Shown here one piece after another: positions 1-41,470 of a stretch of 64,000 bases of DNA. The notes below the pieces were generated by a model that made no database searches, was not told where the DNA came from, and was given only the letters and a program-made list of their open reading frames with translations. Origin of the DNA: Magallana gigas (Eukaryota). A program made the translations under genes and the position numbers. The stretch lies in NCBI RefSeq assembly GCF_963853765.1, contig NC_088857.1, forward strand, positions 34,720,001 through 34,784,000. The letters run 5' to 3'. Each line of letters begins with the position of its first letter. Position 1 is the stretch's first letter.

Positions 1-114
1 AAGCTCCAGGGGCTCGGAGGATGGCACATACTTCTCCCGTTTTCGGTTCCGTCTATTAACTTTCTCCCGACTCTTATTCTCCATTGGTGCTTTCTCTGCA
101 TTGACTACATCCAT
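1..114 (-). CDS. Nuclear receptor paralogue 'NR-0', N-terminal coding exon (partial; gene continues off the left edge)
   Basis: Minus frame from ATG at 114 reads MDVVNAEKAPMENKSREKVNRRNRKREKYVPSSEPLEL with no stop to base 1. This matches the pre-DBD segments of NR-A (KKREKYIPNSEPLALPFC) and NR-C (KPLELPPC). Candidate acceptor AG at 125-124. The zinc fingers lie outside the window. Confidence 0.8.
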   Translation of the reverse strand, partial: MDVVNAEKAPMENKSREKVNRRNRKREKYVPSSEPLEL

Positions 115-606
115 AGTTTTTCCCTGTTTTTATAATCAAAAGTTGGAGATGAGAATATTTACAAAATGCCTTGAATACACGTTGAATAGTACCATCTGTC
201 AGAAAGAAAATGGTGTCTTTCATATTTATGTAACTGTTGTGTTCGATTTCTTTAGACGAATTAATGCTATACAACACTATCGGCACGATCCGCGTGCTGC
301 GGTTATACATTTTCTTAATTCTAAGAAATGTCATATGTAAATCATTCTTACAGGCTTCCTAATAAGAAGAAATACATGCGCAGAAGACTTTATTGTACAC
401 GGTTAAGACCTGGCGAGTTTCAGGACCCCCCCCCCCTTCTTTTATCAGGAAATTGAACTTTTATGCATGTATGACGGCAAACGCTACTGTTTGACAACGC
501 ATACCATTGTGTTGGCAGTGACGTCAACTAAGTAAAATAATCCAATCAAAGGAGAAGGCAAAATTACCAATTGTTAAATTCACAATATACGATTGAATAA
601 GTAATG

Positions 607-719
607 GATAAATAACGAGATGGTGTTGAATAGTTTAGAGAAAACATTCCCTCCGAGGGCCGAAGGCCCGAGGAGGGGATGTTTTCTCTAAACTATTCAA
701 CACTATCGAGTTATTTATC
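607..719. repeat. Imperfect ~113-bp palindrome (foldback element) centred on GGGCC-GAA-GGCCC
   Basis: Left arm gataaataac..gtgttgaatagtttagagaaaacattccctcc pairs with right arm ggaggggatgttttctctaaactattcaacac..gttatttatc. Confidence 0.85.
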
Positions 720-1384
720 TTACTTAAAAAAATTCCCCCATTTGAGCCTCTAAGAAGCTTTGAACCATTCATATATCCAACTGTGATGACATACAAAAGT
801 ATAATTCCAGCAATACAATACACAATATCCTAACCAAACACACCTTTTTAATCATGGACGAGTGAACAGGTGCGCATGTTATAGAAAACCATACCGCTGT
901 ACTGAGCAGACATAGATTTAGAAGATGAATTTTTTAACGCAAAGTACACACTTGTACAATGTTTATAGAGATCCACAGTTCCTGGAAAGACATGCATGGA
1001 TACCGTTTGAATGAATGATATTTTAAACTTGCAAGGAGAAAGGAAAAATCAGAATTTTGACGTCAATTAACAGACAATGATTTATCTAAAAAAAAATGAT
1101 AGGAGTCTTATGAAGTCATAGTGCGACAATATTTCCTATATTGTTAAACTAATTAGAAGGAGTGATATGGTTCAAGGTTCAAAGAGGAAGTCTAAAAGTT
1201 TATGAAAGTGATTTATATGTGATCCCGAATCTATCAAAATTAAGAAAAGGAGATATTTCTGCAAAAAATTTATTCGTGGCTTATCGGATATACATTTATG
1301 GATGACAAAATTCTGTTTTATAAATTTGGATTTATGTTGGAAATACACGTTTCAACATTTTTTCAGTTTTCTTTGTTTAATGCC

Positions 1385-37416: not shown

Positions 37417-40400
37417 CTAAACCACTGGACATTTTTCATGGAAGAAGTCCATCTGTGCTTTATGGTTTTCTGCATCATTCTGGTTTTCCTGTACGTCGTG
37501 AGAAATACACTCGTACACCAGGGGGTACCGCTTCATGATGGACATGTGCAGGTTTTCCATTCTTCCGTTGACTTTCCTGTTTATCTCAGTAAGTTCACGC
37601 ATGAAAATAAGTTTGTCCATGTATGCTGAGAAACGATGTGGCTCATCTTTGTGAAACTTGGCAATCAAATACTTCAGGCACTGCACAAGCTTCCACTGAA
37701 TTGTCTCCACTTTTTCAGGATTCTGCAATGGTGCTCGATCTGCAAGATTGGATTAGACAGAGTTATTTCCCTTTTAAAATTGCTTGCATTGTCAGAGTTA
37801 CAGATATGTACTGGTAATCACACTAAAAACTGTGTTTCACTTCTAAAGCATTGAAAGTATAAATATAGCTATAATTGCTTTGTCCTTCCTGATTTTATAT
37901 ATTTCATCTTATGTTTCCCAGAAATAAAATAAGGAAGGATACATTGTAGATAGAAGTACATGACAAGTACTGAATAATGATAAAATATCTGACTAACTAT
38001 CAACAAGTTCTACCATGTATACTGTTTACTGGGAAAATTTTGCCCGTTTCATTATTGCTCCATTCACCTTCATTTCAAGTTGGCAATTTAAAATGAGTCT
38101 AATGAAACCCTTAAAATAAGCTCTCTTTGACCAAAAACTTAATAGGGCAAATTTAAAACCAGGCAAAATTCTCTACAACCATGACTGGGTTAATATAACT
38201 CATGGCAAAAAAAAAAGGCCTGGATAAAGTGCTTTATGTTGCTGGATTTTACCTCTAAAGGTGATGATGATGGCTTTAAGGACAGCCACCTCTTCGTATG
38301 TCAGCTTCAGTCTCTGTAGGGAGGCTGCAAACTCGATACAACGGTCCACAGCCTCAGGCTCTCCAAAGATCATGATGATATCATCCCGGGTCAGCTGAGC
38401 CTTGCTGTCTGGGTAGTATATGACCTTCATCTCCGTGTTAATGTGGACGTGCTCTCCCATTAGCCAGTACTCGAAGCGAGCCGCTGAAAGGGAACACAAG
38501 TTTTATCTCTTTACTTGTGCTGAAAATCATGCTTTTTAAACTTAGTTTCATGTAATATGTATATGAAGAATGTAAATAAATGTTTCAGGTAATCATAATT
38601 GGTGTTTGAAATTCTGTTCTCAATGTAAATACTGGAGCTTAAGGCCTTTTTTTTTGGCTATTTTGTTCCCCTAGCTGATACTAATGACATATTCACCTTT
38701 AATGAGAGCCATTTTGTCATCTGTTGGAAGGTCCTCAAATCCTGGAATAATTCGGGCAAATGAAATGTACTTCATAATACCATGCTGTATTTGTTCAATG
38801 GCTTTTTTAATCATTTCCATTCTGCCGTCAACATCGATACCTGTGGCCAGGTAAAAACTGTTAAATTCCTCTGTAGATAGCAGTTTTTTCAGTCCAAAGA
38901 ATTCGTTCTTCATGTCGTATTTCTCCTTTAATTTAAAGAACACAAACCAGGAATGAATGCATGTTATAATTTCATACTTTGTATAGCCAATACCAAAGCT
39001 TATGTTATTTTTAAAAAATTTATGAACTGATATCGAAGGCTTACAGAATATTCGGTTTGAAGCTTCTTAATGTAATCTTTGTCAAAGGAATTGATGTACT
39101 CGGGATAGATTTGATCCTGGCTCCATACAAGTGTCCAAATCATTTGTTCCATCTCATCTACAGTCATCTCATATTCACTCTGGCTTGATCGCTGCTTTTT
39201 AGTCATGGGCACTGTCAAAGCATTCTCTGTTGTTGAGAAGAAACCTGGATCAATGGTGGAGAGCCATGGATCGTCGTCTGGGCGGATTTCCTGTAGCAAG
39301 GAACGTCGCTTTTCAGCTATTCTAGCACTCCTTCGTGTGGGAGATTGATCTATATCAACAGAATTAAATATCTTTATATAAAAAAGTTATTCGTTCTTCA
39401 TATTAACATTGATATGAACATATAAATACATGTATTGCTTTGAGAGTTAAAAGTGATCAATTTTTCATCAAATTGTAATTTCATACCAGGATCATCTTTT
39501 GTGACATCTTCCACAGGGGATTTTTCTTGAAGGGAGAGAGTAAGATCTTCCAAGAAGTCAACTGAAGTCTCTGGCTGATCCAAGAAAGAATCGGCCAAAT
39601 CTTCCATCTTAAACTCAAGCTGCTGTGTCTCAGAATGCAGATATGGGGATGATAAATCTTCAAATAATGAGGTGATGTCCGAGTCGGAAAATGCATCCAT
39701 CTGATATGGAGCTGGGGACAATGTCATGAAGTTTCCAGGAGATGCAATGAAATCCACACTGCCCTCTGTGGTTTGTGATGAGACACTGGGAATGGAATAA
39801 TTACTGCTGTGGATGCTGGGTACTGCTGGTGATATGACAGGAGCATCAAACCCCTGGGGTTTAGGGAGGGTGGTATTGACAGGAAGAAGATTGTCTAGTT
39901 TGGGGATGGAGGGTGAATGGTCTGTAATGTGTGCTATGGGTGTCGGAGAGGTCTCCAGGCTCGGTGTTTTGTTCACATTTTCTGCTTTTTCTTTCAGCTG
40001 TTTAACTTCCAGAATAGTTTTGGTTCGAATGGCTACAGTATAGCGCCCATGTCGCATAGCTGGAATATTAAAAAAAAATATTTTGTCACCCCAGCAAAAG
40101 TTAAAAGCAAAACAAGATAATGTTTGTATGTGTCAGCATAGTACGGTAAATCTTTTATGTAGACAGAATACATATTCCCTACATTTGACATCAGCAAAGA
40201 GCAAGTAACATTTAAATTCAATCAATCTATTGACCACATAGGTTTTGACAAATACAAAGAACGGTAAAGTGGCCACTGGATCACTTGTTAAAGATCCCAA
40301 ATGAGTATTTACCTAAGAACTGAGAAGTAAATGTTTGGACAACAATGAGGCAAAAGCTCTTGAATTTAATGAGGTACTTAAAAGGTTTTGTGAAAATTAA

Positions 40401-41035
40401 TATCTTGGGGGGGTCATACCATCTCTTGACATTCCCAGATTAAGACATTTCTGAAGCCTGCAGTATGAGCAGTTTCCTCTTTTTCTGTCGATGATTTTAC
40501 AATTCTTGTCTTTTGCACACTGATATTTATCCTTTTCCATGACTGCTCGACGGAAGAAAGCCTACAGAAGAAAATATTAATATCCTTACAATGTTATACA
40601 CTACAAACTTCTTGATTCATCTGAACCAGATTGTTGCCCATATCACCAAATAAAACAGATTTCAAATTCTGTTCTTATTCTTTAAGTTAAGATAGAGGCA
40701 TCAAACTTGAATTGCTAACTTATCTTCTAAGGGGCTATAATATCTATTATGATTTTTGGGTGTACATGTATGCAATTCAAAGCTGTATAATCAAAAATTA
40801 GGTAAATGTATCCCAAATAATGAAATGGGAATCCAAATCAATATTCCACTACTGAAATCAACTTACAATGCACTTTGTACCTTGATAATTTCAGACTACT
40901 GTGTGTTCGTGAACATGCATAAATTCCAGATTTAAGCCTAACCTTGCATGCTTCACAAGTGTTGACTCCATAATGGATCCCAGAGGCTTCCCCATCACAA
41001 ATCCTACAGGGAGGTAACTCCAGGGGTTTGTACAT
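37417..41035 (-). CDS. Nuclear receptor NR-C, divergent NR1-like, 631 aa from first ATG
   Basis: Exons 41035(acceptor 41066-41065)-40943, 40561-40420, 40059-39487, 39349-39045, 38925-38697, 38483-38253, 37739-37417; GT-AG, 1896 nt in frame. DBD CRICDGEASGIHYGVNTCEACK|AFFRR..GMSRDAMRHGRY. LBD FARIIPGFEDLPTDDKMALIKGARFE; H12 PLVYECI. The frame is open back to the acceptor, so the true start may lie in an upstream exon. Confidence 0.93.
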
Positions 41036-41470
41036 TTTGTCAGTTGTGTCCAGGATTGTTTCCCCTTAAAAAAACAAAATTACATGGTGTTATAAGCTAC
41101 ACAAAATGTTAGGGGTCAGATATAAGTCATGTATTACTTACATCTACCTACTTGATTAAACTACAATATATGTACACACACAGCTCGTTGACAGGAAGGA
41201 TATCACGTACAGTCATCAAGTAGTGATGATACAGGCCATAGTACAAACTTATAAAGGTACCTCTAAACTAAACATCAGTATTTTGCTGTATTTTCCTTGA
41301 AAAAGTAATTATGTTTTTGCCTATATATAAAACCACTTGCCACAAGCAGAACAACAGTAATATGTACTGTGTATGGTAAATTAATTCTAAGGACTAAGGT
41401 CCTTGTAACTGTTCAAAAGAAATGTCATATAGGCTGGTAGTAAAAGATGTGTGTCTACTAAACTACATAA

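What the first reader, a model, noticed from the sequence alone, without database searches (positions are those of the whole stretch)
1..41066. Tandem cluster of at least four divergent, intact NR1-like nuclear receptors
Seen: three complete receptor genes with shared intron positions and phases, a shared post-DBD helix (GRY[ST]xxxRTxxIxEVKxL) and a shared LBD motif, plus the start of a fourth, in mixed orientation (minus, minus, plus, minus). All reading frames are intact although the paralogues are highly diverged, which implies long-term retention. Knowledge: the CTE (GMSxxA/GVRxGR) is of the Rev-erb/E75/ROR (NR1D/E/F) type, and a lineage-expanded NR1P group was reported in the Pacific oyster (Vogeler et al. 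2014). Inference: this is a local birth-and-diversification array, possibly a xenobiotic, dietary-lipid or metamorphosis-cue sensor family with different ligand pockets.
Basis: partly seen in the sequence, partly recalled or inferred. Interest (0 to 1): 0.78.

Follow-up and report, generated by a model that had tools for sequence, protein, structure and literature searches.

The report
Known oyster NR1P nuclear-receptor gene array
The window holds three complete, expressed nuclear-receptor genes and the start of a fourth. They are the Pacific oyster genes CgNR1P3, CgNR1P8, CgNR1P9 and CgNR1P1, named in 2014, so only the reconstructed history of their old tandem array is new.

Summary
Window 1-41066 (Magallana/Crassostrea gigas, chromosome contig C5) carries the start of one nuclear-receptor gene (minus strand) and three complete ones (minus, plus, minus). 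A fifth lies 35 kb to the left.

Published RT-PCR primers match exactly, and my exon models reproduce the published amplicon sizes. The genes are CgNR1P1, P3, P8 and P9, plus P7 outside the window (Vogeler 2014). All are spliced and transcribed, and both the DBD and the LBD are under purifying selection (dN/dS 0.015-0.15).

The genes are therefore already known. These points are added here:
- The five genes sit in 81 kb, and they are not one clade (AU p = 0.0002).
- P8 and P9 belong to one deep NR1P lineage. P7, P1 and P3 belong to the other.
- The dispersed paralogues P2, P4, P5 and P6 nest among the array genes.
- Pearl oyster has both lineages side by side, and Saccostrea has the same P8/P9 tail-to-tail pair. 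The array is therefore old and probably the source of the oyster expansion.
- Every homologue with a readable P-box lacks the canonical CEGCKG, and about nine in ten carry CEACK plus one variable residue (mostly G or A).

The xenobiotic-sensor idea has no support. The ligand and the DNA target remain unknown. The scan had not reported these genes on other DNA.

The parts
1..114 (-). Start of CgNR1P1 (gene D, EKC19742). The ATG is at 114-112 and the first 38 codons lie in the window. The rest of the gene runs left to window -3396.
   Evidence: ORF and model. Vogeler primers for P1 match at -826 and -2389, and the 654-bp amplicon is reproduced. The model is 508/514 identical to the transcript-derived protein P0186.
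12544..21635 (-). CgNR1P3 (gene A, EKC19743), coding part. Exons: 21456-21635, 20257-20401, 19388-19977, 18922-19150, 16847-17071, 12544-12788. 537 aa. The P-box is CEACKA, the second zinc finger has a one-residue insertion, and H12 is short (IPEILFYL, then stop).
   Evidence: Models. P3 primers match exactly and the 571-bp amplicon is reproduced. 532/537 identical to P0206, which stands for 294 sequences on contigs of about 1.7 kb, so spliced mRNA. Pfam zf-C4 and Hormone_recep. dN/dS 0.20.
26162..31599 (+). CgNR1P8 (gene B, EKC19744), coding part. Exons: 26162-26338, 26918-27059, 27260-27544, 27877-28136, 28687-28915, 29596-29817, 31325-31599. 529 aa. The P-box is CEPCKA and the AF-2 core is PLIYEAL.
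   Evidence: Models. P8 primers match exactly and the 851-bp amplicon is reproduced. 527/529 identical to P0283, which stands for 117 sequences on contigs of about 1.9 kb. dN/dS 0.08.
37417..41064 (-). CgNR1P9 (gene C, EKC19745), coding exons. Exons: 40943-41064 (ATG at 41035), 40420-40561, 39487-40059, 39045-39349, 38697-38925, 38253-38483, 37417-37739. 631 aa. The A/B region is very short (9 aa) and the AF-2 core is PLVYECI. The 3'UTR runs on below 37350.
   Evidence: P9 primers match exactly and the 645-bp amplicon is reproduced. 628/631 identical to P0228. All six introns appear as joints with CT..AC ends in three RNA contig runs and in raw poly-A reads. All first mates lie on the + strand, so the RNA comes from the minus strand.
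45293..45322 (-). 3' end of the non-coding first exon of CgNR1P9. It is spliced over a 4.2-kb intron to 41064, and its 5' limit was not determined.
   Evidence: Loose ends of 6 raw reads and one contig at 41073 match only window 45302-45322. Nine bases (TTTTTTAAG) are shared by the exon end and the intron end, so the true joint is 45293|41064, with GT and AG in place.

Best explanation
The region is the main genomic array of the mollusc-specific NR1P group of nuclear receptors in the Pacific oyster. The order is CgNR1P7, CgNR1P1 (both left of the window except for P1's start), then CgNR1P3, CgNR1P8 and CgNR1P9. That is five genes in about 81 kb of chromosome contig C5.

Shown here:
- Each gene encodes a complete receptor: a two-zinc-finger DBD, a long conserved C-terminal extension, a variable hinge and a 12-helix LBD.
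- All five are transcribed and spliced.
- Both the DBD and the LBD are under purifying selection.

Inferred history:
- An NR1P9-type gene and an NR1P7-type gene were already neighbours before oysters and pearl oysters split.
- Tandem duplication in the oyster lineage then added P8 (from the P9 side) and P1 and P3 (from the P7 side).
- Further copies (P2, P4, P5, P6) ended up on other chromosomes.

Inferred mechanism:
- The proteins act as sequence-specific transcription regulators.
- The GMSxx[AG]xRxGR extension resembles the minor-groove-reading extension of Rev-erb and ROR. The Ala at P-box position 2 is small, like the Ser of SF-1/FTZ-F1. They therefore probably bind extended AGGTCA-like half-sites, possibly as monomers.
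- P8 and P9 keep a canonical AF-2 core with the charge-clamp Glu. P7, P1 and P3 have a non-canonical one, so the two lineages probably recruit cofactors differently.
- The ligands, if any, are unknown.
For: Identity:
- All ten published primers for P1, P3, P7, P8 and P9 map to the five genes (nine exactly, one with a single mismatch). My exon models give the published amplicon sizes 654, 571, 720, 851 and 645 bp.
- The GenBank numbers EKC19740-19745 are consecutive.
- A family profile finds 11 loci in the genome, which is Vogeler's count. Primers place the other six.

Expression:
- The models equal transcript-derived proteins.
- Splice joints and strand were confirmed in RNA runs.
- qPCR profiles are published in PMC5041327.

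Selection:
- NG86 dN/dS is 0.20 for A, 0.10 for D, 0.08 for B and at most 0.07 for C.
- By domain it is 0.015-0.034 for the DBD and 0.04-0.15 for the LBD.

History:
- Careful ML tree of 67 proteins.
- AU test.
- Pinctada has three NR1P genes from both lineages within about 65 kb.
- Saccostrea cucullata has the P9 and P8 orthologues tail to tail, 7.8 kb apart.
- A one- or two-residue insertion in zinc finger 2 is shared by P1-P6 only.

Fold and family:
- Pfam zf-C4 and Hormone_recep.
- LBD model with pLDDT 94.9.
- The best solved relatives are all NR1 receptors.
Against: - No outgroup was included in my trees, so the root between the two lineages, and the monophyly of NR1P against other NR1 groups, rest on Vogeler 2014.
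- In the scallop Pecten maximus the two lineages are 6.7 Mb apart on one chromosome. Adjacency is therefore shown only for oysters and pearl oyster, and could be secondary.
- The models for the six out-of-array paralogues were stitched from tblastn pieces and are approximate.
- DNA target, monomer binding, cofactor use and ligand are inferred from motifs only. Nothing here tests them.
Confidence: 0.9

Rival explanations
1. The genes are orthologues of well-known single-copy receptors (ROR, Rev-erb/E75, VDR, LXR, RAR or RXR), as the automatic database names suggest.
For: RefSeq names for these genes and their orthologues include ROR-beta, vitamin D3 receptor, LXR-beta-like, NR1D2-like and RXR-gamma-B-like. 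The C-terminal extension resembles that of Rev-erb and ROR.
Against: - The names contradict each other for one and the same gene.
- A family profile scores Rev-erb-beta LBD (126 bits) and VDR LBD (125 bits) alike. For the DBD it scores ROR-gamma, RAR and Rev-erb-alpha close together.
- Foldseek gives RAR, LXR, FXR, EcR and ROR without a clear winner.
- The oyster has separate CgNR1D, 1E, 1F, 1C, 1H and 1J genes.
- No homologue has the CEGCKG P-box of those families.
- H12 is present, unlike in Rev-erb.
Confidence: 0.03
2. The array is a fast-evolving battery of environmental sensors (for xenobiotics, dietary lipids or settlement cues), whose ligand pockets diversify under positive selection.
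For: - The paralogues are very divergent (23-50% identity).
- NR1 receptors include known xenobiotic sensors.
- P3 sits on a long branch and has a truncated H12.
- The paralogues differ in when they are expressed.
Against: - The divergence is old. Each paralogue has one-to-one orthologues in Crassostrea virginica, Ostrea or Saccostrea.
- LBD dN/dS is 0.04-0.15, lower than in the hinge.
- Copy number in the oyster genome is 11, as reported in 2014, with no extra or decaying copies.
- Published expression is tied to developmental stage.
- No ligand data exist.
Confidence: 0.1
3. One or more copies are pseudogenes or non-functional relics kept open by chance.
For: P3 has a short H12 and an insertion before H9 (LTFPDRSPWPLE). 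Vogeler raised the pseudogene possibility for two other, unassigned oyster receptors.
Against: - All reading frames are open, with canonical splice sites.
- Full-length spliced transcripts exist for all five genes.
- dN/dS is far below 1 in both domains for A, B, C and D.
Confidence: 0.02

Closest known systems
NR1P group of Crassostrea gigas (CgNR1P1-P11; Vogeler et al. 2014, PMC4070562, and 2016, PMC5041327)
   Same: These are the same genes. Primers, amplicon sizes, accession order and family size (11 loci) all agree. Vogeler's subgroup of P10 and P11, and the unstable placement of P8 and P9, match my clade I.
   Different: In the papers I could search, the genes are treated as a list. None mentions the tandem array, its two-lineage make-up, its conservation in Pinctada and Saccostrea, the P-box signature, or dN/dS.
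Rev-erb/E75 (NR1D) and ROR/HR3 (NR1F)
   Same: They share the C-terminal extension GMS[RK][DE][AG]xRxGR. The best solved DBD match is ROR-gamma and the best LBD match is Rev-erb-beta. All belong to NR1.
   Different: - The P-box is mostly CEACK[G/A], not CEGCKG.
- The extension continues as a conserved helix, GRYTxxxRTxxIxEVKxL, not as the basic PKREK-type tail (that comparison is from memory).
- H12 is present, unlike in Rev-erb.
- The oyster has its own NR1D and NR1F genes.
- VDR, RAR and LXR score almost as well.
Lineage-specific nuclear-receptor expansions in tandem arrays, such as the HNF4-derived supplementary receptors of nematodes (cited in PMC4388693)
   Same: Local duplication of a receptor gene gave a lineage-restricted family with non-canonical P-boxes.
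   Different: The scale differs (11 genes against more than 200), and so do the parent (NR1, not NR2A) and the tempo. The oyster copies are old, have one-to-one orthologues and are strongly constrained.

Membership tests
Nuclear receptor superfamily | C4-type double zinc-finger DBD followed by a hormone-receptor LBD | tested here: met
   Pfam PF00105 (81-94 bits) and PF00104 (45-66 bits), above the curated cut-offs in all five proteins. All eight Cys are present. The LBD model has pLDDT 94.9 and matches solved NR LBDs.
NR1P group (Vogeler 2014) | Being one of the eleven C. gigas genes that define the group | tested here: met
   The primers match (nine of ten exactly, one with a single mismatch) and the amplicon sizes are reproduced for P1, P3, P7, P8 and P9. 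The other six were located by primers. The profile search finds 11 loci.
NR1P group (Vogeler 2014) | Monophyly of the group against all other NR1 groups | not tested
   No canonical NR1 outgroup sequences were available as tool-given references. This point rests on the published bootstrap of 97-100. As indirect support, 170 of 214 full-length homologues carry both family motifs, and none has a CEGCKG P-box.
NR1D/NR1E/NR1F (Rev-erb, E75, E78, ROR, HR3) | Orthology to the canonical genes, with a CEGCKG P-box | tested here: not met
   The P-box is CEACKA in A, C and D, CEACKG in E and CEPCKA in B. The profile scores VDR as high as Rev-erb. Separate CgNR1D, CgNR1E and CgNR1F genes exist.
NR1D/NR1E/NR1F (Rev-erb, E75, E78, ROR, HR3) | C-terminal extension GMSRDAV[RK]FGR | tested here: inconclusive
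   GMSRDAMRHGR in C, GMSKSAVRQGR in B and GMSKEG[VI]R[IQ]GR in A, D and E. The core G-M-S...R-x-G-R is kept, but the rest differs. The canonical motif is recalled from memory.
Tandem gene array born by local duplication | Array members are each other's closest relatives | tested here: not met
   The AU test rejects the five array genes as one clade among the 11 paralogues (p = 0.0002). Only the sub-pairs P8+P9 and P1+P3(+P2) group together.

The most novel reading that the evidence does not exclude
The array is an old two-lineage NR1P proto-cluster. An NR1P9-type and an NR1P7-type gene have been neighbours since before oysters and pearl oysters diverged, and this cluster was the source of every later oyster NR1P gene (P1-P6 and P8). 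The whole family carries a non-canonical P-box (mostly CEACK[G/A]) together with a conserved post-DBD helix. It would therefore read a response element different from that of any characterised NR1 receptor.
Probability: 0.45. Interest if true: 0.45.

Novelty: already known. Interest (0 to 1): 0.27.

Why it matters
NR1P is the largest nuclear-receptor group in oysters that has no counterpart in vertebrates or insects. Nothing is known about its ligands or targets, although oysters are sentinel species for endocrine disruption.

The genes themselves are not news. Two results give functional work a rational starting point:
- Five of the eleven genes form an old, constrained array that holds both deep lineages.
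- The family has its own P-box and its own C-terminal-extension helix.

A practical design follows: test one receptor from each lineage (P9 and P7) for DNA target, RXR pairing and ligand response, and do not treat the eleven as interchangeable.

The results also show that the database names for these genes (ROR, VDR, LXR, RXR-like) are misleading.

Tried and rejected
- My first donor for gene C exon 3 (39430) was wrong. Transcript protein P0228 and the RNA joints put it at 39487.
- My first acceptor for gene B exon 2 was 3 bases off.
- The top hit of the representative search was P0001, a 3384-aa oribatid-mite protein with 12 matched stretches. It has no zinc finger and none of the family motifs, so it was set aside as a generic repeat match.
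- Scallop synteny: in Pecten maximus the two lineages are 6.7 Mb apart, so adjacency cannot be claimed for all pteriomorph bivalves.
- Look-ups of P0011 (Ostrea edulis) and P0229 (C. virginica) found no record. dN/dS for C therefore used Saccostrea, where dS is saturated.
- A rooted tree with canonical NR1 outgroups was not built, because no tool-given reference sequences were available and I did not type sequences from memory.
- Literature searches for a report of the tandem arrangement found none. This does not prove that none exists.
- Foldseek against the PDB did not single out a nearest NR1 family.
- One exon ORF of the THAP-gene note (s1-375704) gave no Pfam hit, and I did not pursue it.
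Full report
**Where the window lies.** The window is G000:C5:34720001-34784000 of a 564-Mb genome in 29 contigs. RefSeq proteins of Magallana (Crassostrea) gigas sit on a contig of the same length, 57,274,926 bp. Published C. gigas primers match the sequence exactly. The organism is therefore the Pacific oyster.

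**Checking the observation.** A motif scan of the window plus 60 kb fetched to its left found five first zinc fingers, three matches to the strict second-finger pattern and five GRY[ST]xxxR motifs. The second fingers of A and D carry a one-residue insertion, so the strict pattern missed them. Three sets lie inside the window, one begins 6 bases left of base 1, and one lies 35 kb to the left. Whole-genome searches with Pfam zf-C4 and Hormone_recep put hits at the same places and none elsewhere within 4 Mb.

I built exon models from open frames, paralogue BLAST and GT-AG sites and corrected two details later.
- Gene A: minus strand, 21635..12544, 6 coding exons, 537 aa.
- Gene B: plus strand, 26162..31599, 7 exons, 529 aa.
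- Gene C: minus strand, 41035..37417, 7 exons, 631 aa.
- Gene D: minus strand, 114..-3396, 6 exons, 514 aa. Only 38 codons are in the window.
- Gene E: minus strand, -34714..-37782, 6 exons, 529 aa.

Five intron positions and phases are shared by all five genes, and B and C share one more in the hinge. It misses the fifth gene and the 5'UTR exon of gene C.

**What the genes are.** Vogeler et al. 2014 (PMC4070562) described 43 oyster nuclear receptors, among them a new group, NR1P, with eleven members. Their accession table gives consecutive numbers for five of them: EKC19740 (P7), 19742 (P1), 19743 (P3), 19744 (P8) and 19745 (P9).

Their RT-PCR primers map as follows:
- P7 on gene E (one mismatch in one primer)
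- P1 on gene D
- P3 on gene A
- P8 on gene B
- P9 on gene C

The spliced distance between each primer pair in my models equals the published amplicon size exactly: 720, 654, 571, 851 and 645 bp. A profile of the H3-H5 exon finds 11 loci in the genome, and primers identify the other six:
- P10 and P11 form a second pair on the same chromosome, 4.4 Mb away.
- P2 is on C6, P4 on C10, P5 on C1 and P6 on C4.

There are no extra or decayed copies.

**Expression and integrity.**
- Proteins predicted from short (1.6-2.0 kb) assembled contigs of public runs can only come from spliced mRNA. They match my models: A to P0206 (532/537), D to P0186 (508/514), C to P0228 (628/631) and B to P0283 (527/529). 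These clusters stand for 117-294 member sequences.
- Gene E matches two RefSeq isoforms exactly.
- For gene C, three RNA contig runs and one raw poly-A run show all six introns at my coordinates with CT..AC ends. All first mates lie on the + strand, so the RNA is from the minus strand.
- Loose read ends lead to a non-coding first exon that ends at 45293.
- Vogeler 2016 (PMC5041327) measured P3 and P9 mainly in early development and P8 in mid development.

**Selection.** I compared the genes with orthologous transcripts or genes from other oysters and computed Nei-Gojobori dN/dS.

| Gene | Overall dN/dS | dS | DBD | Hinge | LBD |
|---|---|---|---|---|---|
| A | 0.20 | 0.20 | 0.034 | 0.38 | 0.15 |
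| D | 0.10 | 0.57 | 0.015 | 0.23 | 0.07 |
| B | 0.08 | 0.55 | 0.028 | 0.26 | 0.04 |
| C (against Saccostrea) | at most 0.07 | saturated | dN 0.03 | – | dN 0.08 |

Both functional domains are constrained in every gene tested.

**Family and fold.**
- All named homologues are molluscan: many bivalve orders, the limpet Patella and Octopus. Their automatic names disagree wildly, ranging over ROR, VDR, LXR, NR1D2, RAR, RXR and even estrogen receptor.
- A family profile against solved structures scores Rev-erb-beta LBD (126 bits) and VDR LBD (125 bits) alike. For the DBD it scores ROR-gamma (135 bits), RAR and Rev-erb-alpha (116 bits each).
- An AlphaFold model of the gene A LBD is confident (pLDDT 94.9). 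It matches RAR, LXR, FXR, EcR and ROR LBDs without a clear nearest family.
- Of 214 full-length homologues, 170 carry both family motifs, the GRY[ST]xxxR[TA]xxI helix and the [ILVM]D[ILVM]D[GDNS]R motif.
- The P-box could be read in 202 of these homologues. It is CEACKG in 115, CEACKA in 48 and CEPCKA in 12. It is never the canonical CEGCKG.

These results place the family in NR1 but in no characterised group, as Vogeler concluded.

**History of the array.** A careful ML tree of 67 proteins splits the family into two lineages, each with 100/99 support.
- Clade I holds P10 and P11 together with Patella and Octopus genes. It also holds a bivalve part in which P9 has a Pinctada orthologue and scallop and mussel relatives. 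P8 forms a long-stemmed, oyster-only group there.
- Clade II holds a heterodont-unionid part and a pteriomorph part. In the pteriomorph part P7 groups with two Pinctada genes. Two oyster-only groups, (P1, P3, P2) and (P6, (P5, P4)), are its sister.
- A one- or two-residue insertion in the second zinc finger is shared by P1-P6 only, which supports that oyster-only clade.

Among the 11 oyster paralogues, the AU test rejects the five array genes as one clade (lnL difference 74.8, p = 0.0002).

Synteny:
- In Pinctada imbricata the two P7-like genes and the P9-like gene lie within about 65 kb.
- In Saccostrea cucullata the P9 and P8 orthologues are tail to tail, 7.8 kb apart. This is the same arrangement as B and C here (5.8 kb).
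- The P7 and P1 orthologues of S. cucullata are listed on a contig of the same length.
- In Pecten maximus the two lineages are on one chromosome but 6.7 Mb apart.

The simplest reading is this. An old neighbour pair, one gene from each lineage, grew by tandem duplication in the oyster stem. Some copies were later moved to other chromosomes by DNA-level rearrangement, because they keep their introns.

**How the proteins most likely work (inferred).**
- The DBD is complete.
- The extension GMSxx[AG]xRxGR keeps the residues that, in Rev-erb and ROR, read the minor groove 5' of an AGGTCA half-site. The P-box Ala is small, like the Ser of SF-1/FTZ-F1. Both comparisons are from my own knowledge.
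- I therefore expect binding to extended half-sites, possibly as monomers.
- B and C end in PL[IV]YE[AC][LI], a canonical AF-2 core with the charge-clamp Glu.
- D and E end in PE[ML]LxFLFDE, and A ends in a shortened PEILFYL, without that Glu.
- The two lineages are therefore likely to differ in how they recruit cofactors.
- Nothing here identifies a ligand.

**The sensor hypothesis.** Old one-to-one orthology, low LBD dN/dS, a stable copy number and stage-specific expression speak against a fast-evolving xenobiotic-sensor array. They cannot exclude ligand sensing as such. Gene A (P3) is the fastest-evolving member: it sits on a long branch, has an LBD dN/dS of 0.15 and has a short H12.

**Novelty.** The genes, their group name and their expression are published. 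In the literature I could search I found no mention of the physical array or its history. The increment is modest, and I file the finding as already known.

Noticed in passing
L003:944-1191 and L003:2218-2465 (window -39056..-38809 and -37782..-37535), minus strand: CgNR1P7 has two alternative last exons. Both have a phase-1 acceptor and both give a 529-aa protein. They encode different H9-H12 segments that look roughly 30% identical by eye (identity not computed), with different AF-2 ends (LPETLQFLFTGW against MPELLGFLFDE). RefSeq lists both as isoforms X1 and X2, and the Ostrea and Saccostrea orthologues also carry 'isoform' names. The exon was probably duplicated, which would give two LBD variants from one gene.
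   Followed up: partly
window 52471-56934, minus strand: A TAF11 (TFIID subunit, TAFII28 histone-fold) gene lies downstream of the array. Two exon ORFs hit Pfam PF04719 (E = 5e-12 and 2e-5), and a Ser-rich N-terminal exon lies at 56635-56934.
   Followed up: partly
window 5046-6451: An earlier scan note (s1-375704) reports a THAP-type gene between CgNR1P1 and CgNR1P3. The one exon ORF I scanned (6054-6320, minus strand) gave no Pfam hit, although its sequence contains a CxxHF-like stretch.
   Followed up: partly
window 29818-30050 and 16517-16806: The same repeat (translated ...SPELKAQVSFSDH...) lies in intron 6 of CgNR1P8 and intron 5 of CgNR1P3. It is probably a common oyster transposable-element fragment. 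A 238-aa ORF at 10034-10750 (minus strand) with a Cys/His-rich tail also looks transposon-derived, but it has no Pfam hit.
   Followed up: no
window 49789-49988: A run of 200 N (assembly gap or masked stretch). I left it untouched.
   Followed up: no
L004 (about window -28786) to L003: UniProt model A0A8W8NDH6 (P0159, 647 aa) adds 118 N-terminal residues to CgNR1P7 from exons about 6 kb upstream. RefSeq and the transcript-derived proteins start at the MSKRDM Met, so this is probably a gene-model fusion.
   Followed up: no
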